64,000 nucleotides of DNA from Haliotis cracherodii (GCF_022045235.1 NW_027266264.1:80786001-80850000); one strand, 5' to 3'; shown: positions 1 to 39,801, numbered from the stretch's first letter. The notes: generated from the sequence alone by a model not told the origin. Made by a program: numbers and translations.

Positions 1-175
1 CCAGTGATTGATATTATGAGTATCGATCGCCGCAATTGGGATCGATGACATGCATCAACCAAGTCAGCGAGCCCGACCACCCGATCCCGTTAGTCGCCTT
101 TCACGACAAGTATAGTCGCCTTTTACGGCAAGCATGGGTTGCTGAAGACCCATTCTACACCGGATCTTCACGAGT
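1..175 (-). mobile_element. SINE-like family A copy (non-tRNA structured head), cut by window start
   Basis: Reverse complement matches copies at 11220 and 11838 (GTGAAGATCC...GGTCTTCAGCAACCCATGCTTG...GGCGACTAACGGGATCGGGTGGTC). Confidence 0.85.
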
Positions 176-381
176 CTCCTTACTTATGAATGCACTGGTA
201 TGATGTCACACTGTGATGACGGTCTGCCCACAGTGAAAAAGAATGGAAATAGATCATGTTTGAATTAGCCAATCAGCGTGATGAAAACTCTCATCAGCTG
301 TAATTCTCTCCCTCAGGTATCTACATGTCCCTGTACGCTTCCGTAATCTAATGAATTGTTTGATTACTTTGTTTTTTACAG

Positions 382-471
382 AAAAAAGTTGAAAGTATGC
401 CCATGGAGGAGCGACCACAAAAGCGGAAACGAAGACGTAAGCATCTGATGAAGATCACCCCGTTCACATAA
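382..471 (+). CDS. Terminal coding exon of an upstream Cys-less pLGIC paralog (KKVESMPMEERPQKRKRRRKHLMKITPFT*)
   Basis: tttttacag acceptor; 90-nt exon with the same length and phase as, and clear similarity to, exon 8950-9039; downstream 3' flanks are also homologous. Confidence 0.8.
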   Translation, partial: KKVESMPMEERPQKRKRRRKHLMKITPFT

Positions 472-1419
472 ACATGTCGGCGTTGTCAACCACCTAGTTT
501 GGTGACGTTTGGGATGGTGCCGTGTGTGCGGAATGTCTGAGTCATCTCGCTCTCCTTATCCCAATATACACATTTGAACTTAACCAAGTGATTTAGACAG
601 ACACTAGAATGTGTATCAAAGTGGATTTCTGTTTGGTATTGGGAATGAGTGATTGAGCGAGTGAGAGGTTGATTGAGTTGGTGAGAGTGAGTGAGTGAGT
701 GAGTGAGTGTACCATGGAACATGGAATGTGATCGGTCAGTTGGTCGGCCTCCGTTCGAGCGGTGTACGATCACACAACACAACAGCCAGGTATCATCTGA
801 AATGTGACTTTCTCAGTTCATGACCGAGTCTCAGGAGTACAACAAAATTGTGTCGTAAGAATAACAGGATCTTTGGGTGATTACAACGTATGACTAGATA
901 TCACCGTATTCCTACATCGTGGATTGCTGCTCATGCAATCACCCACTAGTGTGTTTAGATTCAAGCCCTTGCAGGTCAATATTCAACTGCACGTTAATGC
1001 TGACCCTTCATTGAGCCACTCTGTAGCCACAATCACCAGCCACAGTGGCTACACGATCCCCGTTATAGGTCACAAGTGAGTTCCCTCCAACATTCACCGA
1101 CACACCGTGGCAACACTATTTTCCGCTGTTAGTTACCTCTCCACTGGTGCATTGGAGATCTAATACAGACCACCACATCGTCTTTTGTCTCCATCACCGA
1201 TGCAGCCGTGACCTGCTGTAACATCAATAACAAAGCCTGAAGAAATCCAAACTGCGTGATATTCTGTTTTTAATTGACAGCTTCTGTTAGATAGTAAAAC
1301 TGTAATATAGTGTACATATCTGTATAGCATATGAACTATAATAAACACTTCTTATAAAGACCTTTGAGTTTGTCTTTGTTACCACGTCAACAACTTCAGG
1401 ATATGGAATACTTCGCCCG

Positions 1420-2215
1420 AGTGATGCAACGTTTTTGTTTGCTTCCTTGGGGAGGGATACAAAGGTTTATTAATTCCCTGCTTCTTTGGGAAAGTTTACA
1501 ACGGTTTATTGATTCTTTGCTTCCTTGGGGTGTGATACAACGGTTTTATGACAGAGGTTTATTGATTCATTCATTCCTTCGGGAGTGATACAACGGTTTA
1601 TTGCTTTCTTGCTCCTTGGGCTGTGATACAATTCGATTCCTTCGAAGGAGATATCGAGGTATATTGATTCTTTGCTTCCTTGAGGAGTTGTACAGTGATT
1701 TGTTGATCCCTTGATTCCTTGGGGAGTGATACAACGGTTTATTGATCCCTTGATTCCTTGGGGAGTGATACAACTGTTTATTGATCCCTTGATGCCTTGG
1801 GGAGTGATACAACGGTTTATTGATCCCTTGATTCCTTGGGGAGTGATACAACGGTTTATTGATCCCTTGATTCCTTGGGGAGAGATACAACGGTTTATTG
1901 ATCCCTTGATGCCTTGGGGAGTGATACAACGGTTTATTGATTCTTTGCTTCCTTGGGGAGTGATACAACGGTTTATTGATCCCTTGGTTCCTTGGGGAGG
2001 GATACAACGGTTTATTGATCCCTTGATTCCTTGGGGAGGGATACAACGGTTTATTGATCCCTTGATTCCTTGGGGAGGGATACAACGGTTTATTGATCCC
2101 TTGATTCCTTGGGGAGTGATACAACGGTTTATTGATTCTTTGCTTCCTTGGGGAGGGATACAACGGTTTATTGATCCCTTGATTCCTTGGGGAGGGATAC
2201 AACGGTTTATTGATT
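1420..2215. repeat. 39-bp minisatellite (GATCCCTTGATTCCTTGGGGAGTGATACAACGGTTTATT), about 20 copies
   Basis: Directly visible; gives the 13-aa periodic ORFs on both strands. Confidence 0.95.
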
Positions 2216-3355
2216 TGGGCTTTCATATGAAATGTAATCGATGTAATACAACATACATTCAGTACTGGCTAAATAGGGTAGATGAGTTGGTCGTAGGCAG
2301 GTTTTTACATCGTAGTCATCCATGTATAGAATTATGACGTACCACTTCCCCCGTGGATCAAAATGTGTCATGGTCATTTACCCTGTAAACATATCCAAAT
2401 AGTTGTGACAACGGTTGAATATATATTTGCAAACATTGTCATACACAGGCATACAGATAATTGCATACATTGAACCTACCAGGGAAGCAAATATGAGGAC
2501 TGTTTGACAATTTAGAATAAACAGAAACACGCCATTAATAGGGCCCTTACAATCCCTGGTATGTTGTTTAACTTGAGTCTGAGCGGAACTGAACTTTGTT
2601 TCGCTCAACGCTACAAGACATAGAATGTTGAGGATATGTAGATGTCAATATATACAAATACATGTCAAAACGATAAAGGCATTGAATAGACAAGTTACTA
2701 AGAAAGTGTTATCCCATACATTCCTCTCGACCCCTTTCCCCTTTCTAAAAGGCATTGTTTATTCATAGCTTTCGGCTATGGGATCCGTGCCAATTTAAGT
2801 AACAGAGGGGTACACAAAGTACGTGATCTAGACTACCAGTTGTCAGGCTTCCATTTGGTAAATGTCCGGTGGCTGAGTGGGTTAGGTCGCTGACTTGGTG
2901 TGCTGGTGAATAGGTGCCTTACTCGGAGAGTATTGGTATTGGTGGGACAGACGTCACCCAAAATAAGTCCTAGAATTTTACCTTACTGTGAAAATGGATC
3001 CCAGAAATAAGATTTGAAAGCATTACCTTTCTGTCCAGGTGGGACGATAATCGTACCTGGAAGCTCCTCACTGTGCGGTTTAACCATCCACCCATATCAT
3101 AACATATAAACACGCTATACGCAACACAGTGACCTTATATCATAAGATCATTTCTGGCATAATAACTATGGACAAAAGATTTATTTGACAATGATACATA
3201 ACCCCCAGCTACTCCCTGAGCCTCTTACAGATCCTAATCATTTGTTGGCGCCTTAACGACCTTGTTGTGACACGTGATTAATGGCGGGCAGCGAATGTCG
3301 TGTATTGTGTCCGGTCCTCTGAGCCACTGAACATAACCTCCTCGTCTGAGGTAAA

Positions 3356-6300
3356 ATGGCGTTAGATGGCAATGAGACTGATGACTTTATTGTGAGTAGT
3401 GTGGTACAGTGAAACCTCGTTAACACAGACACTCCGCCTTCCGACCGATTAATGTTTGGTAACACCTAAGGTTCGTCAGTCCGGAATAATGTTAATGCGG
3501 ACATGTACTTTTGAAACGGTAACCTAAGTGTCAAGGACGTTTCATTGTATTTATAAGGTGTTCTGGGGTCCTTCTGGATGAATGGTATGTACACTTAAAC
3601 TGTCATCTAGTACAAAGATGAGCTTCAATAGCTGAGACATTGTTCATTTTGCTTGGTTGTCTTTGTTGCTGTTTAGAGCCGCAGCAACCAACGAGTCTGA
3701 CTCTCCATCCCGTTAGTCGTCTCTTACGACAAGCATTGGTTGCTGAAGACCGATTCTATGAACCAAACTTTGATGTAAATCAAATCAGATTGGCAGAAAG
3801 GACAAAGAACGAACTATTATGTATATGGTATTTAGGAGTCAAGTAAATCTAGACTTGTCAAATCACTGTCGACTTGAGTTGTCGTTTTTACCGTATTCTC
3901 TGTGGGTCCAAGAGACAGACTATTTCCAGCAACTATGGCTTCAAAAAGCTGCCTACATTCAAAACAGATATGTTATCAACCAAAAACACATCAAGCCCAA
4001 TATCCCAGCTGCTTATATCTGTGTTTCTGTAAATATATATGTAATCTTAAAATACTTCTTAAACAATTGGCTATTAATTCGAAATACAGACTGAAATTAA
4101 ATTCTATCTAAAATACAAGTACGCAATATTTAGTGTCACTATGTCGCTACGAAACCGTGTCTGTGGTTATGCATAAGGCTTTTGTTTTTGAAAAGGCATT
4201 GGTCAAAATGATTGGATCCGTTTTTTATCTAAGGTTTCCAAAGACTTTCACGTAAATCTCCCCCATCCGGATCTGTCTTCAACTGAAAAAACGTTTGTTC
4301 TCACACAAAACCAGTTTATACAGATGCCACTATACATACATTTATGTCTTCCACCACAGAGGCATGTCTCGTTGAAGATCGTGTTTCTGAAGATCAGCAA
4401 CATCGACACCATCAAGGAGGAGTACTCGGCAGACATTTTCCTCTCAGCCAGATGGCGGGAACCTGCACTAGACAGAACCAACAAGGAGGTTAGTACACAG
4501 CAATCATCTTCCTCTTAGCCAGATGGAGGGAGCCTGCACGAGACAGCACCAACAAAAGGTTAGTCCTCGGCAGGCATCTTCCTCTCAGCCAGATGGAGGG
4601 AACCTGCACGAGACAGCACCAAAAAGGAGGTTAGTACTCGGCAGACATCTTCCCCTCAACCAGATGGAGGGAACCTGCACGAGACAGAACCAACAAAAGG
4701 TTAGTACTCGGCAGACATCCTTCTCTCAGCCAGATGGAGGGAACCTGCACGAGACAGCTACTAAAAGGAGGTTAAGTACTCGGCAGACATCTACCTCTCA
4801 GCCATTGAAAAATATGTTCCTCTATGTCGGGACATGGGGAGGTAATACATTGGAACAACCTGATCGTCATTTGTCAGCTCGTGCTCTGTCCGCGACCCTC
4901 ACTGGGACTAGATTGGAAGGAATACGTTTGTCATTGCCTTTCTATCAACAAATCAACGTGTTTACCCATTGATCAGCACTATATTGTACAGAGAAGGAGA
5001 AGTAGTATTGTGGAAGGGGGTATTAGACATAATTTCCATTGTTGGCAGACCAAGAAAATCAACTGGGAGTCGTACTTCGACCCCAAGCTCAACATCCAGA
5101 ACAACATCGGGGAGTTGAAGCAGACGACATGGCGGGAGTTGCAGACGGAGGCGGGAGGGGAGACGTATGTGATGGAGAGACGCCGCATCAAGGGCAAGTT
5201 CTTCGAGAAGCTGGAACTGCAGGACTTTCCCTTTGACATCCAAGTAGGTCTGAAAGAGTCCTGTGGATTTTTGTCAACCATGGAAAACACATGAACTTGC
5301 ATCTATACATATCAAAATAATACCCCATCTTAACATACAGAACAAAGACGCCAATTATTAACCATTCTCGGTTATGCACCGAAAAAGATTCCATTTGGCG
5401 TAAAGGCTAAATAACGGTGAACATTATATGACATCTCATCTTGTCTGTCTGTCAACAGTCCTCGTTCTCTCCACAGGATCTCTCCATCCTCATCACCAGC
5501 GAATCCCCGCCCACTGATGTGGAGCTTATGGAGTTCAACTCGTCCATCAGCCACGTCAACGTGGACAGCTTTGTTGATCAGCAGGAGTGGGGGTTGTACG
5601 ACTTCGTGGTGGGCGAGCAGCGTCTCACGCCCAATGAATACAGCAGCGTCAAGTACAAGCGTCCTGGCTTCATCTTCCGGTGCTGTGCAGTCAGGAGGGT
5701 CGGCTACTTCACGTGGAACATCATGTTGGTCATTGTAAGCATAGAGATAGTTCTCGACATCTATACACGATTACCCCAAAGACAAGGCTATTTCAAGCAC
5801 GTGAACACCACGTAACCCGATGCCCAGGGTAAACCCATGGAAGTCTACATGTCCGCCAAAACAATTATTTGGTTTCAATTATGGGTAACTGTACATGTTC
5901 TGAAATGACACGTGTGTTTCTCAGGGTGAGTCAGTAAAAGCAATTTAGCTTTTCTGTAGAACCATTACACCTATGCTTTCAACATTTTACTTTGGTCAGA
6001 GGACACCACGTCGAAATAGATTCTGTTATAAGTTTGTTGGAGATATAATCATTTAATCAGTCGGTCAGCTCATGTCAGTGGGTGCATCCTCATCAGCAGT
6101 GACGTGGACCCTAGGAGGATCTTTCATCAGTCGTTTTGGCAAGCAAGTTCCATTTTTCATGGCATCATTGTCATTAATATATGAACTACCGACATTGTTT
6201 TACATTACACGTGTCCCATTTCCAGGCTATGATAAGTTCTCTGTCATTTGCCGCCTTCTCCGTTGACCGCGAACTGCCCCAGAGGCGTCTTCAGCTGTCC

Positions 6301-9039
6301 TTCACCTTGATCCTCACCATGGTGACCTTCAAGTTCGTGGCCTCGCAGTCAGTACCCAAGCTCTCCTATCTGACGTATCTGGTAGGTGGAACATGGCGTC
6401 TCTGTTTACTGTTCTGTTCAGAACCTGCGTGCGAGTACTGTTTCAGTTGTTTAGAGAATTTTAAAGCAATAGCTTGAAGCACATATACACAGTTATTGAC
6501 AATTGAAAAAAAACAAGTTCATTCAGACATATCTGGAAGGTAAATTTTGGCGTCGGTGTACATGATTCAAAACGCTGATTCAAGTCTTTGGCATAGTATG
6601 AATCAATCAGTTGGAGTAGATTTGATACAATACCTACCAAAGGCAACTTTAGTAACAATTTAATCAAGTGAACAACCATGATTCTAATGAATGACGCTCT
6701 CGTTGTCTCGTCTCGGATAAGGCAACGGTCATCACCAAACTGTGTACACCTAATAGAGGCCAATGCCACAATAATATTGATACAGTCATGATGATGTCTC
6801 AGTCAGTAGTGTAAGTGGCATATTTCAGCACTTACTGGTAAACTAGTTTGGAAGTTTAATCGCTTGATTTCAAGTGGTCCTTGAAATTTTTAAGACCGTA
6901 AAGCTGAACTTTTTTCAATTAATTCTTGAGAGAAGACATTCACAAGGCGTCCCGCACTATATTGGCAGTTTTAAGTTTAGTTGATGGGTATGATCAATAG
7001 TCAAGGAGGAGACACGAGCAGAGTTGCGTCCGTTGGGCACGCCAGAAACCTATGATTATGGGCTCGAATCCAGGTTCGACCCGATTATGTTTCTAGGTTT
7101 GTCAGCACTCGTGGGTCCTCGTCCGTGCTCGTGGGTTTCACCAAAGCGTTAAACGTCTGAGACCTGCATCACTTCAGGCTATGCTCCCACTATAAGGGGA
7201 AACGCCGTGATATAACTGTACCTCTGTTCAAAGCGGAGACGAACTCAACTCACTCACTCGCTCAAACTCAAGTAGGTAGTCGAGAAAATCGGGGAAATGT
7301 CTTAACAAAATCATGACAGCGTTTTTAGGGTAGTGAACCTTTTGGAGGGTTACGATGACGATAGATAAAGGCTTCGAGAGGGTCATACATTTTGGTAAAT
7401 TACTTTTAAAATATGTCTGTTCCATCCAACACTGTAATAAATGCCTCAGACCGAAGAGACGTCAATGTTTGGGATTTCTACTCCAATTGTATTGTAATCA
7501 CATAACGTTCCATTCTGTCCCAGGACCGTTACATCCTTTTGTCGATGTCGTTCCTGTTCCTGGTCTGCGGTTGGCACGCTGTCATAGCGTTGTATAAAAG
7601 TGACGACGCCACGGCTGGCCTCATGGACTACTACGCTTTCATCACATTTGCTTGCCTTTATCTGGTCGGGCAGCTGATGTTTGTGAGCATCGTGGGGACC
7701 AAGGTGAGTTAGACGACGTCACATGGAGTAGACTGCACGCAGATAATACAGAAGTATGACATCGCTTAGAAGTGTACCCCCCTATGAAAAGGGTTTCGCT
7801 GTATATAATTAAATACACCAACGTAGAGTAATTCAGATTTGTATTTAAGTGGAATAGAAGGGCCGACTCATGTACGTATCAGGTGTTCGGGAGACGGCCA
7901 TCCTTTGAGGCTGCAGCAGTTAAGGTGAAGGTCACGTCAGTTTGCCATAGTATTTAAGCCCAAAAGTTCCACAATACAATAAAATGAGAAGACTTTACTG
8001 GTTTCTATTTCTATGTGCCTACAATAATTACTGACTACAATACAACGTTTCTCACAATATCGATGACTGGATTGTCTGGTCCAGACTCGAATATTCGCCG
8101 TCATATAGCTGAAATATTTTATTGTTGAGTACGAGTGCGGCCTTAAGCAGCAAACAAACAAAACTATTATTAAATCCGTGCAATACCGCACGTGTAACAG
8201 CACGTGATTCGTGCAGAAAGGAGTTATTTTGTTCAAGGTGTTTCGGGACACACGCACCCTCCTCCACCAAACTCGAGTGGCAGTGGTAGCCATCTTACAT
8301 GGTTATTGTCAACAAATCCAGGGAATTTATTTTGTTTATCTTTAATTATCAAATAACAAAACTCCCTTTGAATACCATTTTCAGTTCGTGTTGAAAAAAA
8401 GACAAAAAGAACGTATGGAGGAAGAATACCAGGTCAGTCATGTGTATATTCTTTATTTAGGGCTAAACTTGCGAGATCAGGGGATTATCTGTTAATATGA
8501 TTATACAACGGGGACATTACAGCACAGCGTGACGTCATTGTATATAAACAGCCGGGGGAAATGTATACACCCCTGTTTGGTATGGGCTAAAATGAAACCA
8601 ACAAGAAATGGATATTCGATGGTGATGTATTTGATACGGGTGTTATAGTTGTGTTTTGTACCTTATGTTTGCAGTGTTTCGGTGACTGTTTTCAGTCTGG
8701 TAACGTTTTGATAGCGTTTGTAATATTTTGATCAAATCCCATTTTCAAGTGTGTTCTTTCGACCGGCAGTTTTTTACCATTCCATACCCTCAGTGTGCGT
8801 TGGGGGTAAGGGCTAGTTTGTCCAACCCTTGTCAGATGTGTTGCTAGGTTGGATTTGGGATATTTTATTAGCCGAATTGATTATTGATGTTGGTTTGGCC
8901 TTGTAATCTTCCGTGAACTGATTTTATGCAAGTGTTATGTCGTTGACAGAAAAAACTGGAAAGTATGCCGACGTGGGATCGACCGCAAAAGCGTAAACGA
9001 AAACACAAGCATTTCATGAGCATCAACCCGTTCACATAA
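3356..9039 (+). CDS. Cys-less (Pro-loop) pentameric ligand-gated ion channel subunit, 363 aa; exons 3356-3391, 4360-4488, 5049-5243, 5477-5734, 6226-6381, 7524-7703, 8385-8432, 8950-9039
   Basis: All introns GT-AG and phase 0, and the frame stays open when joined. pLGIC motifs: ISNIDT..E.YSADIFLSARWRE, LELQDFPFDIQDL (Cys-loop position without cysteines), QEW, RRVGYF pre-M1, M2 RLQLSFTLILTMVTFK, PKLSYLTYLDRY, four TM helices with a very short M3-M4 loop. Exon 1 is less certain (AAAATGG context, in-frame TGA upstream, gtgagt donor). Confidence 0.88.
4421..4803 (+). repeat. 70-71-bp tandem repeat (about 5.5 copies) derived from the 3' end of pLGIC exon 2 plus its splice donor
   Basis: Unit AGTACTCGGCAGACAT..CCTCTCAGCCAGATGG.GGGAACCTGCAC.AGACAG.ACCAAC/AAA.GAGGTT; the first copy is coding sequence. 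Confidence 0.9.
7005..7262 (+). mobile_element. tRNA-type SINE family C copy
   Basis: Similar to 23096-23374 (GGGCACGCCAGAAACCTATGATT...TTATGTTTCTAGGTTTGTCAGCAC); (ACTC)n tail. Confidence 0.75.
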
Positions 9040-9699
9040 ACAACATGTTGGCGTTCTGGGCTGTATCGACGTCACTGTACTCCGACAACGTTGTTCGTTG
9101 TTCACGCGATCAGCTACTGGTGTGTCTGGTCCAGATCCGGGTACTTACAAGATGCCACGATATAGATGCTCTAAACTACAGTTCCTCATAAAACAACATT
9201 CACCAACACTTGACCATTCACAATCCTGGGACCTGGGATAGTTAATCGGGAACCTCCTCTTGGTGACTTATCTCCATCGTCGATGCTGTCGTGACTTGAA
9301 TTATTCATATAGGCTAAAGTATCGCCTGTGTGATATTGTATTTTAACTGACTTTTGTTAGATTGTGAAACCGTGATATGGTGTACAAATAGAGTATATGA
9401 AATAAAATAAAGACATCTTCGGCCATTAAAGAGTTTGTCTTTGTTACCATGTCAACATCGTGGTTCCGGAACTGGACCACGTCGCCAGAACGATCTGTCT
9501 GATCCTTGCTTCCTTGCGGAGTGGTGCAACTGTTTATTGATTTGCACATGTATTTTTTATGCAATTATGCAATCTGTGTGTTATATACGTATAACGTATA
9601 TCTAAAGTAATATAACACATAGTCCATGCGTCAGACCAGATATTGGTACCACCTGGGGTGGCCAAATCTCACTATGAATTTTGGAAAGTCATATATCTA

Positions 9700-31608: not shown

Positions 31609-34600
31609 ATGCTGTCTCTGCTGGCCTACCCCCTCAGCGTCCTTCTGGTCCTTGTCTCCCGAACCGACACAAGCACGGGTACGTTGATTGGGGGTATAAC
31701 GGTTAATGTCTTGGCATTCGTGCGAGGCATTTTCTTGAATGGTGTTGATTCCTTTATGTATGGGCTTTTGTTTCTAGGGACAGACATACGAGTATCCATA
31801 CGGACGTGACGTTTTTAATCTACGAATGATACCTGCCTAATTGTCATGTTATAAATCAATGTATAGTCGATGCATTTCCATTTGTGCATATTTCACAAAC
31901 AATAATTAGCTATAAACGGCGAACAAGCATGGCTACTGGAAACGACATGGAGTAGTGGGGAAAATCATGGGTATTGGGGACGGTTAGCATGGGGAAGTGG
32001 GGACAAGCATGGGTATTGGGGACGGTTAGCATGGGGAAGTGGGGACAATCATGGGTATTGGGGACGGTTAGCATGGAGTAGTGGGGAAAATCATGGGTAT
32101 TGGGGACGGTTAGCATGGGGAAGTGGGGACAATCATGGATATTGGGGACTGTTAGCTTGGGGTACTGGGGACAATCATGGATATTGGGGACGGTTAGCAT
32201 GGGGAAGTGGGGACAATCATGGATATTGGGGACGGTTAGCATGGGGTACTGGGGACAATCATGGATATTGGGGACGGTTAGCATGGGGAAGTGGGGACAA
32301 TCATGGATATTGGGGACGGTTAGCATGGGGAAGTGGGGACAATCATGGATATTGGGGACGGTTAGCATGGGGTACTGGGGACAATCATGGATATTGGGTA
32401 CGGTTAGCATGAGGTACTGGGGACAAGCATGGGTATTGGGGACGGTTAGCATGGGGGACTGGGGACAATCATGGATATTGGGGACGGTTGGCATGGGGTA
32501 CTGGGGACAAGCATGAGTACTGGGGACGGTTAGCATGAGACATTGGGGACGACAAGCACTAGATACGGGGCATCTTATCCCGAATTAGTGGTATGTTTTA
32601 TTAAGACACATCGAAACAAGAACAGTGAGTGAAGTTTACTATGAGTTTGGGGGTCGATGGGCAGATCCATCAATGGTGTGACGCACTTTACTTTCTTCCT
32701 GTTTGCAACAATTGTTAGTTTAGGCTGAATTTTGAATTCTTGAATAATATCATCGGAATAGGGAAGTTTCAAATGTGCTGTAATACATACAGTAACAAGA
32801 TACTTGACCTGAATTCCGGTTATAAATTGTCACACGTTTACAAATGTAGGGTCTGGTTAACCGCAGTACAGGAAGTTTATAGACTTCTAATCAGGTTGAG
32901 CAGAGGAGAGATATATAATAATAGATGTAGACCTCACTTGCTTTTGTAGATTTCAGTTAAGATATAAAAAGGTTAGCCTCCTAATCACTCGTCTTTCTTG
33001 ACAGATAACATTCTAGAATACACAACTTACGATGACAACATGGTGATTATGTCAGTTGTTCTGTGCAGGTGGCATGGTGGACACACTACTTGGATCCTAC
33101 CAGAAGGAAGTCCATCCCCGAACTGAGGACAACCAGAGTGTGTACGTGACGCTGGATCTGGCGATCAGACAAGTTGTAGATCTGGTAAGCTGACGCCTTC
33201 TTGTGAATGCTTTATGAAGAAACATTATGAAAGTCGGAGCAATGTTTTGTAATGGATCAATGCTGTGCATAGTGTCATCGCAGGGTGGCATGGTGGCAGG
33301 ATAGCGGGATATTTGGCTTGCAGCCTTAGGGCGAAGTTGTGGTAGGGGGGTATTTTAGTGGGGTGGGAGGTCGGCGTGATGATGGGATGGCTGGGTGGCA
33401 GTGTAGTGGGGTGGGAGGTCGACATCATGATGGGGTGGCTGGGTGGCAGTGTAGTTGGGTGGGAGGGTGGCGTGATGATGGGGTGGCTGGGTGGCAATGT
33501 GATGGGGTGGGAGGTCAGCGTGATGATGGAATGGCTGGGTGGCAGTGTAGTGGGGTGGGAGGTCGGCGTTATGATGGGGTGGCTGGGTGGCAGAGTAGTG
33601 GGGTGGGAGGGTGGCGTGATGATGGGGTGGTAGGGGGCAGTGTAGTCGGGTGGGAGGGTGGCGTGGTGATGGGGTGGTAGGGGGGTATTGTAGTGGGGTG
33701 GGAGGGTGGCGTGATGATGGGGTGGTAGGGGGGTATTGTAGTGGGGTGGGAGGGTGGCGTGATGATGGGATGGCTGGGTGGCAGAGTAGTGGGATGGGAG
33801 GGTGGCAGTGTAGTGGGGTGGGAGGGTGGCAGAGTAGTGGGATGGGAGGTCGGCGTGATGATGGGGTGGTAGGGGGGTATTGTAGTGGGGTGGGAGGGTG
33901 GCGTGATGATGGGATGGCTGGGTGGCAGTGTAGTGGGGTGGGAGGGTGGCAGTGTAGTGGGGTGGGAGGGTGGTAGAGTAGTGGGGTGGGAGGTCGGCGT
34001 GATGATGGGGTGGTAGGGGGGTATTGTAGTGGGGTGGGAGGGTGGCGTGATGATGGGGTGGTAGGGGGGTATTGTAGTGGGGTGGGAAGTCGGCGTGATG
34101 ATGGGGTGGCTGGGTGGCAGAGTAGTGGGGTGGGAGGGTGGCGTGATGATGGGATGGGAGGGGGCAGTGTAGTGGGGTGGGAGGTCGGCGTGATGATGGG
34201 GTGGCTGGGTGGCAGTGTAGTGGGGTGGGAGGGTGGCGTGTTGATGGGATGGCTGGGTGGCAGTGTAGTGGGGAGGGAGGTCGGCGTGATGATGGGGTGG
34301 CTGGGCGGCAGTGTAGTCGGGTGGGAGGGTGGCGTGGTGATGGGGTGGTAGGGGGTATTGTAGTGGGGTGGGAGGTCGGCGTGATGATAGGGTGGCTGGG
34401 TGGCAGTGTAGTGGGGTGGGAGGGTGACGTGATGATGGGATGGCTGGGTGGCAGAGTATTGGGGTGGGAGGGTGGCAGTGTAGAGGGGTGGGAGGGTGGC
34501 AGAGTAGTGGGGTGGGAGGTCGGCGTGATGATGGGGTGGTAGGGGGGTATTGTAGTGGGGTGGGAGGGTGGCGTGATGATGGGGTGGTAGTGGGGTATTG

Positions 34601-37600
34601 TAGTGGGGTGGAAGGGTGGCGTGATGATGGGATGGCTGGGTGGCAGTGTAGTGGGATGGGAGGGTGGCAGTGTAGTGGGGTGGGAGGTCGGCGTGATGAT
34701 GGGGTGGTAGGGGGGTATTGTAGTGGGATGGGAGGGTGGCGTGATGATGGGGTGGTAGGGGGGTATTGTAGTGGGGTGGGAGGGTGGCGTGATGATGGGA
34801 TGGCTGGGTGGCAGAGTAGTGGGATGGGAGGGTGGCAGTGTAGTGGGGTGGGAGGGTGGCAGAGTAGTGGGATGGGAGGTCGGCGTGATGATGGGGTGGT
34901 AGGGGGGTATTGTAGTGGGGTGGGAGGGTGGCGTGATGATGGGGTGGTAGGGGGGTATTGTAGTGGGGTGGGAGGGTGGCGTGATGATGGGATGGGAGGG
35001 GGCAGTGTAGTGGGGTGGGAGGGTGGCAGTGTAGTGGGGTGGGAGGGTGGCAGAGTAGTGGGGTGGGAGGTCGGCAGTGTAGTGGGGTGGTAGGGGGGAT
35101 TGTAGTGGGGTGGGAGGGTTGCGTGATGATGGGGTGGTAGGGGGGTATTGTAGTGGGGTGGGAGGGTGGCGTGATGATGGGATGGCTGGGTGGCAGAGTA
35201 GTGGGGTGGGAGGTCGGCGTGATGATGGGGTGGTAGGGGGGATTGTAGTGGGGTGGGAGGGTGGCGTGATGATGGGGTGGTAGGGGGGTATTGTAGTGGG
35301 GTGGGAGGGTGGCGTGATGATGGGATGGCTGGGTGGCAGTGTAGTGGGGTGGGAGGTCGGCGTGATGATGGGTTGGTAGGGGGGCAGTGTAGTGGGGTGG
35401 TAGGGTGGCAGTGTAGTGGGGTGGGAGGGTGGCAGTGTAGTGGGGTGGTAGGGTGGCAGTGTAGTGGGGTGGTATGGATGGGTGGCAGTGTAGTGGGGTG
35501 GGAGGGTGGCAGTGTAGTGGGGTGGTAGGGGGGCAGTGTAGTGTGATGGGATGGATGGGTGGCAGTGTAGTGGGGTGGGAGGGGGGCAGTGTAGTGGGGT
35601 GGTAGGGTGGCAGTGTAGTGGGGTGGGAGGGTGGCAGTGTAGTGGGATGGGAGGGTGGCGTGATGATGGGGTGGTAGGGTGGCAGTGTAGTGGGGTGGTA
35701 GGGTGGCAGTGTAGTGGGGTGGGAGGGTGGCAGTGTAGTGGGGTGGTAGGGTGGCAGTGTAGTGGGGTGGTATGGATGGGTGGCAGTGTAGTGGGGTGGT
35801 AGGGGGGCAGTGTAGTGGGGTGGGAGGGTGGCAGTGTAGTGGGGTGGTATGGATGGGTGGCAGTGTAGTGGGGTGGTAGGGGGGCAGTGTAGTGGGATGG
35901 ATGGGTGGCAGTGTAGTGGGGTGGGAGGGTGGCGTGGTGATGTGGTGGTATCGGGGCAGTGTAGTGGTGTGGGAGGGTGGCGTGGTGATGGGGCATCCTA
36001 GCGAGGGTAGTGGGTGGTTGAGTGGTGGGATGATGATGTTGGTTAATGGCAGAATGGAAGGGATGGTGGGTCGGATGGACAGCAGGGTGGTACAGGGGCG
36101 GGACAATGGGATGGCTTGGGGGCAGAGCAGTGATGGGTGTTCTTTCTTAATTGACCGGTTCCGACCCTTTTCAATACGTATGACGTTGTTTTACAATGAA
36201 CCTAGTGATGTGTCATCTTCTGACGACTCAACTTACTCCTTGTCTACATTTCTAGGCCGAGACAAAGCAGATTCTGACAACCAATCTGTGGATCCGCATG
36301 GTAAGATCTTTATTTTCACGAAAATACAAATATTAAATAAATAATATTGCCCGAGGTTTAACCGAAAAAAATTATCGTTCATCGAACATGTTGATATGGT
36401 TGGAAAAGGTCAGTTGTGTGTCGGAGCACATCGTTGGGGTCCTCCAAAAACACATGTCTTGTGGCAGGGAACTAAAAAGTAACATTCTAACAAGAATATG
36501 AAATGGTTACAATATGATTTATTCTGCAGAATTGGACCGACCACAGACTCACATGGAACCCATCAAGTTTCGATGGAATTGACACCATTTATGTACCTTT
36601 GGACAGTATCTGGACACCCGACGTCACCCTTTACGATGAGTAAGTGTATTGGCTGACTGTTATTAATTATTTAGCCATGAGGACATGAGTTGATCCTAGT
36701 AATTCACAGTAATCACAGGACCAATGCTTGTCGTCCCCTATAGTAGCCCATGCTTGTCGCCCCCTATAGTAGCCTTTGCTTGCCATCCCCTATAGTAGCC
36801 AATGCGTGTCGTCCCCTATAGTAGCCCATGCTTGTCGGCCCTATGGTAGTCCATGCTTGTCGCCCCCATAGTAGCCCATGCATATGGCCCCTTATAGTAG
36901 CCCATGCATATGGCCCCTTATAGTAGCCCATGCTTGTCATCCACTATAGTAGCCGATGCTTGTTGTCCCCCTATAGTAGCCTATGCGTGTTGTCCCCTAT
37001 AGTAACCTATGCTTGTCGCCCCCTATAGCACCCCATGCTTCTCACCCCTATGGTAGCCCATGCTTGTCGCCCCCTACAGTATCCCATGTCTGTCGCCCCC
37101 TATAGTAGCCTATGCTTGTCATCCCTATAGTAGCCCATGCTTGTCGCCCCCTATAGTAGCCCATGCTTGTCGTACCCTATAGTAGCCCATGCTTGTCGCT
37201 CCTATAGTATCCTATGCTTGTCCCCTATAGTAGCCCATGCTTGTCGTCCCCTATGGTATCCTTTGCTTGTCGTCCCCTATAGTAGCCCATGCTTGTCGTC
37301 CCCTATAGTAGCCCATGCTAGTCGTCCCCTGTAGTAGTCCATGATTCTCGCCCCCTATAGTAGCCCATGTTTGTCGTCCCCTATAGTAGCCCATGCTAGT
37401 CGTCCCCTATAGTAGACCATGTTTGTCGTCCCCTATAGTACCCCATGCTTGTCGTCCCCTGTAGTAGCCCATGCTTGTGGTCCCCTATAGTAGCCCATGC
37501 TTGTCACCCCCTATAATAGCCCATGCTTATCGTCCCCTATAGTAGCCCATTCTTGTCGCCGTCTATAGTAGCCCATGCTTGTCGCCCCCTATAGAAGCCC

Positions 37601-39801
37601 ATGCTTGTCGTTCCCTATAGTAGCCCATGCTTGTCGCCCCATATTAGCCCATGCTTGTCGTCCCCTATAGTAGCCCATGCTTGTGGTCCCCTATAGTAGC
37701 CCATGCTTGTCGTCCCCAGTTCCTAGCAGACACTAGGTACTGTTGCGCCTTATGAAGACATTCACTCAGTGATGAGCTAAGGAACAGATTGCACAAGTCT
37801 GTATTCTATTTGTAGCACAGCATTTGGCAGTAACGTCGCTCTGTCGGAAAGGAAGTTCCACAAACTAAAAGTAACCAATGAAGGCAGAGTAACGCAGAGA
37901 TTCCCCACCGTCCTCAGCAGCATCTGCGGTGTCGACACCACCTACTTCCCCTTTGACAAACAGCGATGTCCACTCAAGTTTGGCTTGTGGCTTCACGATG
38001 ACGACATGGTGACCTTGACAAGCGACCAGACAGGGGACACCACGTCGTATCTCGAGAATGCTGAATGGTTCCTCACCGGAATCGATGCAGAGAAGAAGCC
38101 ATATTTGTACAATGGTTTAGTCTACAGCACTATCACGTACAGTGTGTCCATACAAAGACGACCGGCGTTCTTCATGCTGACGTTGTTCTTCCCATGTTTT
38201 CTCCTCAGTAGTATGTCCATCCTCGGGTTCTTCCTCCCGCCAACTTCAGGGGAGAAGGTCGCGCTGCAGGTCACCCTGCTGCTGTCCCTGACAGTGTTCC
38301 TGTTCCTCACCATAGATACGCTGCCACCAAACTCCGAACCATTGCCACTTATGTGTAAGTACAGAAATAGTGACTGGACATGTCACTTGAAGATCCACCA
38401 CTAGACCACTAGCATTCGTCAACACTCGCCCCTTTCTGTAACCTGCAAAAAGACTCGTCCCCCTATCGATGATTGTCATGTGCGAAAATACGACAAAATC
38501 AAAAATCCGCATTTGACTTCAAGTTCTTCGGTCAAAGAAACCCTCGGGAATAATTTTTGATTTTACATATGTCTTGCATCTAAAAATATACCAAAGATAC
38601 AGTTATATGTGTTCAATCATGCTGTATAATACCGCATGTCCCGATGTGCTTTAAATTGAATCCGAAATTATAATATTTTTGGGGATATATACGTGAATCA
38701 TTGCTCAACGAGTAGACAATTCTTTTAGCTATGCCCCTTTGCGCTTAGACGGAACCTGGTCGCTAAAATGGCCACGAGAGGGGCACGAGTCAGTATTCGG
38801 CTTGTCCCCGAATAACACGAGTTGGTCACGAATGGACCACTAAGTCGGTCAGGGCCCAAGAACCCATTGCTTGTCGTAATAGCCGACCAATGAGGAGTGC
38901 TTATGTGGCCTGGGTATTTGGCCGCTTACGATGCGGGTTTTTGTTTATGCTGTCAATCACTTGTTTGTCTGGACCAGACGATTACTTTCAGGTTGCAGTG
39001 ATAAAGTTGTAACAGCGTTGCCCCGGCGTAAAACAACACTTATGTTACAAATTATTCATATTAGCGGGTGGACTCTGGCATTTTATACACCTTAATGACA
39101 GGTATCGTGTATTTTATATTGCAGGCGTGTACTTCGTGTTGGTGATCATGCTTGCAACCACGTCTTGCGTCCTCGCTGTTATTGTTCAGAAAATTCACCT
39201 GAAAAGCAAACAAGGCTGGAAGGTTCCTCCTCTGGCACGAACTGTCATCATCCACTGGCTTGGTCGTCTGTTGCTGATGAAGAGGCCACACGTTCGCAGG
39301 AAACATACAGATGTACGAGAGTTCAACCAACAAGTCTACAATTTATTTATTTTTTATCCTTGGTATCAAAGTCAAAGCTACAGAACTGAAAATTATTAAT
39401 AGTTTGGCTTTAAAATGTATTGGATGTTTAGTTCCTTTGATCAAGATATGTTTTAAGTTTTAACCATTCCATGTTCTGAAGTTTGGGTGTTGTATATCCA
39501 GGAGGACCTTGAAGCAGAGAGAGGGGGCAACACCGTCGGTATTCAGAAAACTCCAACAGCAGAAACATCAGATGCACCAGCACCGTCAACATTACCTAGG
39601 GAGTATGGGGCTTTCCGGGAGATACTGACGGGCCTCGAGCAGCTGCTGAAACTCCATAAAGGGGAGGGGGCAACAGACGACACTGCCGAATATCAGGACT
39701 GGCTAACCATTGCATCTATCCTTGACAGATTCTTCCTGATTCTCTCTGTAGTCATTTCGGTTGTCTTATCAACCGTCTTCCTTATCCATTTTTCCGTTTG
39801 A
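31609..39801 (+). CDS. Nicotinic acetylcholine receptor-like subunit (non-alpha, cation-type), 455 aa; exons 31609-31678, 33069-33184, 36256-36300, 36530-36639, 37816-38354, 39125-39312, 39502-39801
   Basis: Signal peptide; typical 45- and 110-nt exons (QILTTNLW; W.D.RL.W...IWTPDV.LY); Cys-loop CGVDTTYFPFDKQRC; GEK before M2; W...A.ILDR before M4; phases join to 1368 nt. The donor at 39312 is the least certain. Confidence 0.9.
31925..32560. repeat. 42-bp minisatellite (dimer of about 21-bp halves) in nAChR intron 1
   Basis: GG(G/A)TATTGGGGACGGTTAGCATGGGG(AAG/TAC)TGGGGACAATCAT, about 14 copies. Confidence 0.95.
33340..35995. repeat. 2.65-kb modular G-rich repeat in nAChR intron 2
   Basis: Shuffled modules GTAGTGGGGTGGGAGGGTGGC / GTGATGATGGGGTGG / TAGGGGGGTATT / CTGGGTGGCAGT; very strong G skew. 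Confidence 0.95.
36721..37718. repeat. 26-bp minisatellite (CCCATGCTTGTCGTCCCCTATAGTAG) in nAChR intron 4
   Basis: Directly visible, about 38 copies. Confidence 0.95.

What the first reader, a model, noticed from the sequence alone, without database searches (positions are those of the whole stretch)
3356..9039. Cys-less pentameric channel with no signal peptide and a strongly basic C-terminal tail: candidate inverted-topology (intracellular-sensing) pLGIC
Seen: the reconstructed protein starts MALDGNETDDFI and runs straight into beta-strand 1, with no hydrophobic leader and an in-frame TGA 9 nt upstream of the ATG. The Cys-loop disulfide is absent (LELQDFPFDIQDL). The M3-M4 loop is tiny and acidic (YKSDDATAGLMD). 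M4 is followed by about 45 very basic residues (KFVLKKRQKER...QKRKRKHKH), and the distal basic cluster is conserved in the neighbouring paralog (QKRKRRRKH). Established: canonical pLGICs have a cleaved signal peptide, extracellular N- and C-termini and a cytoplasmic M3-M4 loop; Cys-less pLGIC clades are known in invertebrates; basic flanks favour the cytosol (positive-inside rule). Inference: together these features fit a flipped channel whose ligand domain and tail face the cytosol, where no disulfide is needed, or an organellar channel. The NLS-like tail could direct it to the inner nuclear membrane or bind phosphoinositides. Caveat: NET and NSS sequons are present.
Basis: partly seen in the sequence, partly recalled or inferred. 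Interest (0 to 1): 0.8.

Follow-up and report, generated by a model that had tools for sequence, protein, structure and literature searches.

The report
Possibly upside-down pentameric ion channel
This is a real, transcribed mollusc gene for a "Cys-less" pentameric ligand-gated channel. It and all its relatives in worms, rotifers and molluscs lack a signal peptide and carry an arginine-rich tail after the last membrane helix, so the whole clade is probably inserted with its ligand-binding domain facing the cytosol, which has not been described for this channel superfamily.

Summary
Window 3356-9039 (+) holds an 8-exon, all-phase-0 gene for a 363-aa pLGIC subunit.

- **Transcript support:** cDNA-type contigs from four runs show six of the seven splice junctions. 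They also cover exon 1 and its leader, which has in-frame stops and no upstream coding exon.
- **Protein features:** the Cys-loop cysteines are replaced (E...FPFD...L). The M3-M4 loop is 14 aa and acidic. The post-M4 tail is 45 aa with 14 K/R.
- **Family:** the gene belongs to the known Cys-less "Pro-loop" clade (Jaiteh 2016), here found in molluscs, annelids, nemerteans, rotifers and flatworms.
- **New result, clade-wide:**
  - 0 of 31 full-length representatives have a signal-peptide-like N-terminus.
  - 31 of 31 have more K+R on the ligand-domain side (12.0 against 3.5).
  - An RRRR-x-M-xx-KD-R-x-Y motif follows M4 in most members.
  - N-glycosylation sequons are depleted and not conserved.
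- **Control:** 13 canonical Cys-loop receptors of the same genome show the opposite on every measure.

Best reading (about 0.6): N-in/C-in topology, with the ligand domain and tail in the cytosol. This is computational only. The NLS/inner-nuclear-membrane idea has no support. I found no paper discussing the topology.

The parts
3262..3287 (+). Block of about 25 nt, identical in both tandem paralogs, containing CACGTG, at the apparent transcript start
   Evidence: Alignment of the two paralogs' 5' regions. The RNA contig begins at 3273. Its role as a promoter element is inferred.
3281..3322 (+). 13-codon upstream ORF in the leader (MAGSECRVLCPVL, then stop), in frame with the main ORF and closed by a stop
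   Evidence: The paralog has a 13-codon counterpart, MAANECSVLIRIL. It is not a signal peptide, because it ends in TGA before the main ATG.
3356..3391 (+). Exon 1 coding part: MALDGNETDDFI, no hydrophobic leader
   Evidence: junction 3391>4360 in X3 and X4; the same junction with an I>V variant in X2. The paralog's exon 1 is MALVGDGIDAIV with the same GTGAGT donor.
3392..3584 (+). Alternative extension of exon 1 (donor after 3584). It ends TGA-ATG and at best encodes M followed by exon 2.
   Evidence: Junction 3584>4360 in X3 and X4; sequence. Neither reading gives a signal peptide.
4360..4488 (+). Exon 2: beta1-beta2 of the ligand-binding domain
   Evidence: Pfam Neur_chan_LBD hit is weak, E = 0.012.
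5049..5243 (+). Exon 3: ends in the Cys-less Pro-loop ELQDFPFDIQ
5477..5734 (+). Exon 4: beta7-beta10, pre-M1 FRCCAVRR, and the start of M1
   Evidence: 193 relatives found with this exon.
6226..6381 (+). Exon 5: rest of M1, M1-M2 loop, pore helix M2 (PQRR...L9'TM), and VPKLSYLTYL
   Evidence: Pfam Neur_chan_memb E = 7.5e-6.
7524..7703 (+). Exon 6: M3, the 14-aa acidic M3-M4 loop, and M4
   Evidence: RNA contigs match up to 7645 and then carry a paralog-like M4 half.
8385..8432 (+). Exon 7: juxtamembrane basic tail FVLKKRQKERMEEEYQ, a degenerate copy of the clade's RRRR-x-M-xx-KD-R-x-Y motif
8950..9039 (+). Exon 8: distal tail with QKRKRKHKH, and the stop codon
   Evidence: (junction 8432>8950 in all four runs).
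379..468 (+). Last exon of the upstream tandem paralog (...QKRKRRRKH...). The rest of that gene lies upstream of the window.

Best explanation

**Proposed topology.** Nothing precedes M1 that could start translocation. M1 has Arg-Arg on its N-terminal side, and M4 is followed at once by a poly-basic helix. The polypeptide is therefore most likely inserted N-in/C-in. That places the beta-sandwich ligand-binding domain, the M2-M3 loop and the basic tail in the cytosol. The short M1-M2 loop and the short acidic M3-M4 loop would face outside or into a lumen.

**Proposed function.** The pentamer would be a channel gated from the cytosolic face by an unknown ligand. The pore keeps L9', T6' and R0'. 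It has no acidic -1'/-2' ring, and in this gene an extra Arg sits at -1', so I infer a preference for anions. The membrane it sits in (plasma membrane or an organelle) is unknown.

**Shown:** gene structure, transcription, family membership, the pLGIC fold of a 50%-identical relative, and the clade-wide sequence signatures with their contrast to canonical receptors.

**Inferred:** the orientation, ion selectivity, pentamer formation and ligand gating.
For: **Gene and transcripts.** The model is. Six of seven splice junctions, plus exon 1 with its in-frame stops, appear in cDNA-type contigs of four runs. At paralog-distinguishing sites in exons 3, 5, 7 and 8, the contigs' listed differences follow the window gene rather than the paralog.

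**Family membership.**
- Exon 4 finds 193 relatives.
- Full-length relatives pass Pfam's Neur_chan_LBD cut-off.
- A clade profile hits GABA-A gamma2, ELIC and GlyR at E = 1e-29 to 1e-24.
- The AF2 model of the 363-aa Plakobranchus relative has pLDDT 91.2. Its M4 helix continues about 30 residues past the membrane.
- The best Foldseek matches are GABA-A, GLIC, sTeLIC and ELIC chains.

**Topology signatures in 31 representatives.** These come from molluscs, annelids, nemerteans, rotifers and flatworms.
- None has a hydrophobic uncharged N-terminal core. N-terminal extensions of 13-262 aa are hydrophilic.
- K+R on the ligand-domain side is 12.0 against 3.5 on the other side, reversed in 31 of 31.
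- The motif RRRR-x-M-xx-KD-R-x-Y follows M4 in most members, from Schistosoma to Patella.
- Sequons in the ligand domain number 18 observed against 29.9 expected. Seventeen of 31 have none, and no column is conserved.
- No conserved cysteine pair exists.

**Same-genome control, 13 canonical Cys-loop ORFs.**
- 13 of 13 have a signal-peptide-like N-terminus.
- K+R is 3.6 against 5.8, reversed in 0 of 13.
- Post-M4 tails are 0-16 aa.
- Sequons number 34 against 24.4 expected, with 2-4 in every ORF.
Against: - No experiment addresses orientation.
- Every characterised pLGIC, including the bacterial relatives closest in sequence, has the ligand domain outside the cytoplasm.
- Large N-terminal domains can occasionally be translocated without a cleaved signal peptide. 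Neuregulin-1 is an example I recall from memory and did not check here.
- Planarian homologues give neuronal RNAi phenotypes (reported in PMC9874803). That fits a conventional receptor as well as an intracellular one.
- My signal-peptide and charge measures are simple heuristics, not SignalP or DeepTMHMM.
- Depth on exon 1 is lower than on exons 2-4, and run X1 shows no 5' junction. A further rare 5' exon outside the laid stretch is therefore not strictly excluded.
- The joined 363-aa model itself could not be sent to family, fold or database tools.
Confidence: 0.6

Rival explanations
1. Canonical orientation. The ligand domain is extracellular or lumenal as in all known pLGICs. It would get there without a cleavable signal peptide, for example with M1 acting as a reverse signal-anchor. 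The basic post-M4 helix would lie outside, for example packing against the ligand domain or the outer leaflet.
For: - All characterised family members have this orientation (established knowledge).
- The fold is fully conserved.
- Planarian homologues act in sensory neurons (PMC9874803).
- The tail helix is on the same side as the ligand domain and could in principle be a structural "latch".
Against: - It would require post-translational translocation of 190-450 hydrophilic residues and of a tail with about 12 K/R.
- An Arg-Arg pair sits on the N-side of M1.
- The K+R bias is reversed in 31 of 31 members.
- Sequons are depleted rather than enriched, whereas canonical receptors of the same genome have 2-4 each.
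- There is no conserved disulfide.
Confidence: 0.3
2. Annotation artefact. The true first exon, encoding a signal peptide, lies further upstream and was missed.
For: Depth over exon 1 (4-25) is lower than over exons 2-4 (50-120). Contigs break exactly at 4360. Run X1 shows no 5' junction.
Against: - The only junctions into exon 2 come from 3391 (or its I>V allele) and 3584.
- The leader contig 3273-3391 carries in-frame stops.
- The paralog has the same 12-codon exon 1 and a conserved leader.
- No homologue of the relatives' N-extensions lies in window 1-4400.
- Gene models and transcript-derived ORFs from more than 20 other species also start without a signal peptide.
Confidence: 0.03
3. The tail is a nuclear-localisation signal that sends the channel to the inner nuclear membrane. 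This is a sub-case of the cytosolic-tail reading.
For: PQKRKRKHKH resembles a monopartite NLS (sequence). A distal basic cluster recurs in the short-N-terminus relatives.
Against: - The part conserved in most of the clade is the juxtamembrane RRRR motif, not the distal cluster.
- The distal cluster is missing or different in most representatives.
- The same RKR-type sequence could equally be an Arg-based ER-retention or assembly signal, or an acidic-lipid binding patch (established knowledge, not tested here).
Confidence: 0.05

Closest known systems
Eukaryotic Cys-less "Pro-loop receptor" clade (Jaiteh, Taly and Henin 2016, PMC4795631), including the schistosome "Cys-less" LGICs (PMC9874803)
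   Same: The Cys-loop cysteines are replaced by a polar and a hydrophobic residue around FPFD. The clade is dominated by spiralians. A Schistosoma japonicum member, plus Macrostomum and Opisthorchis members, are among the hits to exon 4. NCBI names the relatives after ELIC and GLIC.
   Different: Those papers trimmed the termini and do not discuss signal peptides, the post-M4 tail or orientation. Flatworm members have Glu at -2' and long M3-M4 loops. This gene has PQRR and a 14-aa loop.
Prokaryotic pLGICs ELIC, GLIC and sTeLIC
   Same: No Cys-loop disulfide, no N-terminal helix in the short forms, and a minimal M3-M4 loop. Profile E is about 1e-27 to ELIC. They are close structural matches.
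   Different: From established knowledge, the bacterial proteins are exported with a periplasmic ligand domain and end shortly after M4. This clade lacks any leader and adds a 35-60-aa basic tail.
Anionic Cys-loop receptors (GABA-A, GlyR)
   Same: These are the best profile matches in the PDB, E = 4e-29 for GABA-A gamma2. M2 aligns without gaps from R0' to P23', with L9'-T-M as in GlyR (plus established numbering).
   Different: Those receptors have Cys-loop cysteines, a signal peptide, glycosylated ectodomains, a long basic M3-M4 loop and a short C-terminus. The 13 canonical (Cys-loop) receptors of this same genome show those last four features.

Membership tests
pLGIC (Pro-loop) superfamily | Neur_chan_LBD / Neur_chan_memb sequence signature | tested here: met
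   For the window's own exons, exon 5 hits Neur_chan_memb at E = 7.5e-6 and exon 2 hits LBD at E = 0.012. Eight full-length relatives all pass the LBD cut-off (26.6-42.1 bits against 26), and two pass the TMD cut-off. The clade profile hits PDB pLGICs at E = 1e-29. The joined window protein itself was not scanned.
pLGIC (Pro-loop) superfamily | Pro-loop FPFD motif, pre-M1 Arg, four TM helices, M2 with Leu 9' | tested here: met
   DFPFDIQ; FRCCAVRR; hydrophobic segments 195-221, 228-246, 260-282 and 294-321; R0'...L9'TM.
pLGIC (Pro-loop) superfamily | Beta-sandwich plus four-helix-bundle subunit fold | tested here: met
   AF2 model of the 50%-identical relative P0173 has pLDDT 91.2. Foldseek top hits are all pLGIC chains, E about 1e-19. 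The window protein itself was not folded because it has no reference.
pLGIC (Pro-loop) superfamily | Forms a ligand-gated pentameric channel | not testable with these tools
   Needs expression and electrophysiology or cryo-EM.
Cys-loop receptors in the strict sense | Two cysteines 13 residues apart flanking the FPFD loop | tested here: not met
   E and L occupy these positions. No conserved Cys pair exists in the clade's ligand domain.
Cys-less eukaryotic clade (Jaiteh 2016) | Eukaryotic pLGIC without Cys-loop cysteines that groups with spiralian and protist Cys-less sequences | tested here: inconclusive
   The gene lacks the cysteines and is a eukaryotic pLGIC. Its nearest relatives are mollusc, annelid, nemertean, rotifer and flatworm proteins, including a schistosome "Cys-loop ligand-gated ion channel". 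I built no tree against Jaiteh's data set, so clade membership rests on similarity and shared features.
Canonical pLGIC membrane orientation (N-out/C-out) | Cleavable N-terminal signal peptide | tested here: not met
   0 of 31 clade representatives have one, against 13 of 13 canonical ORFs of the same genome, by a hydrophobic-run heuristic. The transcript leader carries stops. SignalP was not available.
Canonical pLGIC membrane orientation (N-out/C-out) | More K+R on the M1-M2 / M3-M4 side; short C-terminus after M4 | tested here: not met
   For the clade, K+R is 12.0 (ligand-domain side) against 3.5, reversed in 31 of 31, with tails typically 35-60 aa. For the controls, it is 3.6 against 5.8, reversed in 0 of 13, with tails of 0-16 aa.
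Canonical pLGIC membrane orientation (N-out/C-out) | Ligand domain exposed to the lumen or outside (glycosylated, disulfide-bonded) | tested here: inconclusive
   Sequence proxies only. Sequons are 18 against 29.9 expected with none conserved in the clade, and 34 against 24.4 in controls. N141 is T in the RNA contigs. The actual orientation needs experiments.

The most novel reading that the evidence does not exclude
A whole clade of animal pentameric ligand-gated channels, in molluscs, annelids, nemerteans, rotifers and flatworms including schistosomes, is inserted upside-down relative to every known pLGIC. Its members would then be the first pLGICs gated by a cytosolic ligand, anchored by a conserved poly-arginine motif after M4.
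Probability: 0.55. Interest if true: 0.85.

Novelty: new variant of a known kind. Interest (0 to 1): 0.72.

Why it matters
pLGICs are a textbook receptor class, and their extracellular ligand domain is taken for granted. A clade with the ligand domain in the cytosol would be a new mode of use for this fold, either as an intracellular messenger-gated channel or as an organellar channel.

It would explain why this clade has resisted "deorphanisation" by bath-applied transmitters. It would also change how the schistosome members, proposed as anthelmintic targets (PMC9874803), should be screened.

The prediction can be tested directly with standard topology assays. It rests on a signature that separates the clade from canonical receptors of the same genome on every measure I tried.

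Tried and rejected
- **Joined model.** The joined 363-aa model has no reference. I built it only inside scripts from window.fa, for hydropathy, local tblastn and local alignment. It was not sent to any family, database or fold tool. Those searches were done exon by exon or with the closest full-length relative, P0173.
- **The look-up of encoding contigs was closed.** I could not check upstream stops on the transcript contigs that encode P0030 and P0090.
- **The search for homologous proteins** was not used, because of its cost and because the claim does not rest on absence of relatives.
- **Hidden N-terminal-extension exon.** I searched window 1-4400 with the relatives' N-extensions. Nothing scored below E = 0.18.
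- **Are the RNA contigs from the 9.5-kb-upstream paralog?** Rejected for exons 3, 5, 7 and 8, where none of the paralog's differences is among the contigs' listed differences. It remains open for the second half of M4, which is paralog-like in the contigs.
- **Literature.** Four searches for an inverted or intracellular pLGIC found nothing. The library holds open-access papers only.
- **Not available:** SignalP, DeepTMHMM and multimer folding.


Full report
**1. What is in the sequence**

The stretch is intron-rich eukaryotic DNA. The window is G000:C1:80786001-80850000 of a 1.18-Gb assembly, and it contains no N.

Reading 3356-9039 on the + strand gives eight exons: 3356-3391, 4360-4488, 5049-5243, 5477-5734, 6226-6381, 7524-7703, 8385-8432 and 8950-9039. 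Every one is in phase 0 with GT..AG borders, and together they encode 363 aa.

- The protein starts MALDGNETDDFI and runs directly into beta-strand 1.
- An in-frame TGA lies 9 nt upstream of the ATG, with three more in-frame stops within 150 nt.
- The loop reads EKLELQDFPFDIQDL, with E and L where the Cys-loop cysteines would be.
- Four hydrophobic segments lie at 195-221, 228-246, 260-282 and 294-321.
- The M3-M4 loop is 14 aa and acidic, YKSDDATAGLMDYY.
- The 45-aa tail has 14 K/R and 2 H.
- The two sequons are NET at residue 6 and NSS at residue 141.

**2. The gene is transcribed and spliced as modelled**

No run is on record as RNA. However, four runs from two studies hold about 0.11-0.16 of the stretch's words, close to the exon share of 0.18.

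Laid on 3050-9045, their contigs skip the introns exactly. The junctions seen are 3391>4360, 4488>5049, 5243>5477, 5734>6226, 6381>7524 and 8432>8950, all GT..AG. The contigs are therefore cDNA-derived.

One contig covers 3273-3391. This is exon 1 with 83 nt of leader, including the in-frame stops. Depth upstream of 3250 is about zero.

The only other junction into exon 2 comes from an alternative donor after 3584. That extension ends ...TGA ATG, so at best it encodes M followed by exon 2. No junction brings in an upstream coding exon.

Three caveats apply:
- Depth over exon 1 is lower than over exons 2-4.
- Run X1 shows no 5' junction.
- Some rows of the output were not shown.

The contigs differ from the window by 1-3%. 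None of the paralog's differences in exons 3, 5, 7 and 8 is among the contigs' listed differences, so there they follow the window gene rather than its paralog. From 7646 to the end of exon 6 (the second half of M4) they carry a paralog-like sequence. That explains why the 7703>8385 junction appears only as a gap of unknown content. I take this to be an allele, a gene-conversion tract or a sister species.

**3. Tandem family**

- A 97%-identical exon 4 lies 9.5 kb upstream. That paralog has the same exon structure. Its exon 1 is also 12 codons (MALVGDGIDAIV) with the same GTGAGT donor, and its last exon lies at window 379-468 and reads QKRKRRRKH.
- A third, more distant copy lies about 32 kb upstream.
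- Three further loci lie elsewhere in the genome.

**4. What family it is**

Searched exon by exon, the window's exons give only weak Pfam hits: exon 5 to Neur_chan_memb at E = 7.5e-6, and exon 2 to Neur_chan_LBD at E = 0.012.

Exon 4 alone finds 193 proteins among 1.8 billion representatives. The evidence from those relatives is as follows:
- Eight full-length relatives all pass Pfam's LBD cut-off.
- A profile of 39 of them hits GABA-A gamma2, ELIC, GABA-A beta and GlyR chains at E = 4e-29 to 1e-24.
- The closest full-length relative is P0173, from Plakobranchus. It is 363 aa long, like this gene, and 49.6% identical to it.
- P0173 folds with pLDDT 91.2 into a beta-sandwich plus four helices.
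- All of its best PDB matches are pLGIC subunits.

Named members come from these groups:
- Molluscs: Littorina, Gigantopelta, Patella, Babylonia, Batillaria, Mytilus, Solemya, Elysia and Plakobranchus.
- Annelids: Owenia and Helobdella.
- Nemerteans: Tubulanus and Lineus.
- A rotifer: Rotaria.
- Flatworms: Macrostomum, Opisthorchis and Schistosoma.

NCBI calls them "cys-loop ligand-gated ion channel-like" or "proton-gated ion channel-like", the names of ELIC and GLIC.

This is the metazoan "Cys-less" Pro-loop clade of Jaiteh et al. 2016 (PMC4795631). The schistosome "Cys-less" LGICs of PMC9874803 belong to it as well. I did not build a tree against their data sets.

**5. The new point: the odd features are clade-wide and reverse those of canonical receptors**

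I aligned the window protein (inside a script) with all hits of 330-700 aa. I kept the 31 non-redundant sequences that span beta1 to M4.

*(a) No signal peptide.*
- The N-terminal extension before beta1 is 13-262 aa and hydrophilic.
- No sequence has a signal-peptide-like N-terminal hydrophobic core. The only such runs within the first 40 residues are beta-strand 1 itself in two short forms, plus 8-9-residue runs of mean hydropathy below 1.9 in three others (P0093, P0113, P0140). The two stronger runs lie outside that region: a helix at residue 39 in P0037, and an internal stretch at residue 159 in one probably fused model, P0079.
- Extra RefSeq isoforms and transcript-derived ORFs show the same.

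*(b) Reversed charge bias.* I counted K+R within 15 residues of the membrane helices (25 for the tail).
- The ligand-domain side (pre-M1, M2-M3 loop, tail) has 12.0 on average.
- The M1-M2 plus M3-M4 side has 3.5.
- The ligand-domain side is higher in 31 of 31 sequences.

*(c) A conserved poly-Arg motif after M4.* Most members share [YF]-x3-RRRR-x-M-x2-KD-R-x-Y directly after M4, for example:
- Schistosoma FDASRRRREMVERDRLY
- Rotaria FVTYRRRRIMKRKDRDY
- Tubulanus FGALKRRREMIRKDQEY
- Patella LTAYRRRRLMKQKDRLY

The window gene has a degenerate version, LKKRQKERMEEEY. AF2 models this region as a straight continuation of the M4 helix.

*(d) Short acidic M3-M4 loop.* The loop is 12-22 aa and net acidic in most members. 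The mean net charge is -1.8. Flatworm members have long loops.

*(e) Few sequons.* In the ligand-domain core there are 18 observed against 29.9 expected from shuffles. Seventeen of 31 sequences have none, and the best-conserved column holds 4 of 31.

*(f) No conserved disulfide.* The only conserved cysteine is the single or double Cys before M1, so there is no conserved pair.

NET is absent from the paralog's exon 1. N141 of NSS reads Thr in the contigs of all four runs (5538 A>C).

**6. Internal control**

The same genome holds at least 150 Neur_chan_memb matches. Many lie in single open frames of about 400 aa. I took 20 such loci and kept the 13 whose open frame runs from a plausible first Met to beyond M4. 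These have classic Cys-loops (C...FPFD...C).

| Measure | Cys-less clade (31) | Canonical ORFs, same genome (13) |
|---|---|---|
| Signal-peptide-like N-terminal hydrophobic core | 0 of 31 | 13 of 13 (uncharged run of 8-20 residues) |
| K+R, ligand-domain side vs other side | 12.0 vs 3.5 | 3.6 vs 5.8 |
| Ligand-domain side higher | 31 of 31 | 0 of 13 (12 lower, 1 equal) |
| M3-M4 loop | mostly 12-22 aa, net acidic | 35-89 aa, mostly net basic |
| Tail after M4 | typically 35-60 aa | 0-16 aa |
| Sequons in ligand domain | 18 vs 29.9 expected | 34 vs 24.4 expected, 2-4 in every ORF |

The control figures are unless marked. The same crude measures therefore separate the two groups completely, within one genome.

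**7. Most likely mechanism**

A eukaryotic polytopic protein with no leader, a long hydrophilic domain before its first membrane helix, Arg-Arg on that helix's N-side and a poly-Arg stop after its last helix is expected to insert N-in/C-in. This follows from the positive-inside rule and from signal-anchor orientation, which are established knowledge.

With four membrane helices, this puts the ligand-binding domain, the M2-M3 coupling loop and the tail in the cytosol. The two short loops would face outside.

The pore aligns without gaps to the standard M2 numbering from R0' to P23'. It keeps T6' and L9', has no acidic -1'/-2' ring, and in this gene has Arg at -1' (PQRR). I therefore infer anion preference. 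This agrees with a remark on "PAR-type" motifs in the mollusc Cys-less clade (PMC13174522). Flatworm members instead have Glu at -2'.

The ligand, the membrane (plasma or organellar) and partner subunits are unknown. The tandem paralog is a candidate partner.

I put the inverted orientation at about 0.6.

**8. Rivals**

- **Canonical orientation by an unconventional route, about 0.3.** It is favoured only by precedent and by the neuronal RNAi phenotype of planarian homologues cited in PMC9874803.
- **A missed signal-peptide exon, about 0.03.** See sections 2 and 5.
- **The NLS / inner-nuclear-membrane idea.** It has no specific support. What most of the clade conserves is the juxtamembrane motif, not the distal cluster. 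RKR-type clusters have other well-known cytosolic readings, such as ER retention or assembly control and acidic-lipid binding (established knowledge, untested here).

**9. Known or new**

The clade is known as a sequence group. Jaiteh et al. discarded the N- and C-terminal segments and say nothing about signal peptides or orientation. The schistosome note does not either.

Four full-text searches found no report of an inverted or intracellular pLGIC. The library holds open-access papers and preprints only. I therefore class the gene as a member of a known clade, and the clade-wide topology signature as a new variant of a known kind, pending experiment.

**10. Limits**

- The joined protein was never sent to a search or fold tool, because it has no reference.
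- The heuristics are my own, and there is no prokaryotic or protist outgroup.
- Logan contigs cannot give transcript ends or expression levels.

Noticed in passing
window 4408-4804: A 71-bp minisatellite of 5.6 copies. Its first unit is the 3' end of exon 2 plus its splice donor, so each copy carries a decoy GGTTAGT donor. The paralog has at least seven copies. The period is not a multiple of 3, and RNA contigs use only the first donor.
   Followed up: partly
window 3262-3322: A block of about 25 nt, identical in both paralogs, containing CACGTG at the apparent transcript start. It is followed by a conserved 13-codon upstream ORF (MAGSECRVLCPVL here, MAANECSVLIRIL in the paralog) in the leader.
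   Followed up: partly
window 7646-7703: In all RNA contigs the second half of M4 differs from the window and resembles the upstream paralog (LTFLLIV...). This may be a gene-conversion tract or a divergent allele or species.
   Followed up: partly
window 37985-38404 (+): An open frame encoding loop C to M2 of a canonical cation-type nicotinic-like receptor (PPTSGEKVALQVTLLLSLTVF). A conventional pLGIC gene therefore lies about 29 kb downstream of the Cys-less one.
   Followed up: no
window 31946-32537 and 33356-35981: Strongly G-rich tandem arrays with GC skew up to 0.85: a 42-bp unit in 14 copies, and a 24-bp unit (TAGTGGGATGGGAGGGTGGCAGTG) in about 109 copies.
   Followed up: no
window 3650-3850, 6850-7250, 8050-8250: Intronic repeats with contig depth of 1e4-1e5 in the RNA-type runs. 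They look like SINE-like, highly transcribed elements.
   Followed up: no
G000, e.g. C56:12.05-12.15 Mb, C23:12.18-12.28 Mb, C23:68.1-68.27 Mb: At least 150 Neur_chan_memb matches in the genome. Many lie in tandem clusters of apparently intronless ORFs of about 400 aa with clear signal peptides, which indicates a large expansion of canonical Cys-loop receptors.
   Followed up: partly
Relatives P0081, P0009, P0032, P0090, P0092, P0140, P0178 (N-terminal extensions): Long-form clade members share an amphipathic helix motif, L-x2-L-x2-L-x3-[IV]-x2-NT-x2-L, about 35-50 residues before beta1, inside otherwise hydrophilic extensions. Its function is unknown.
   Followed up: no
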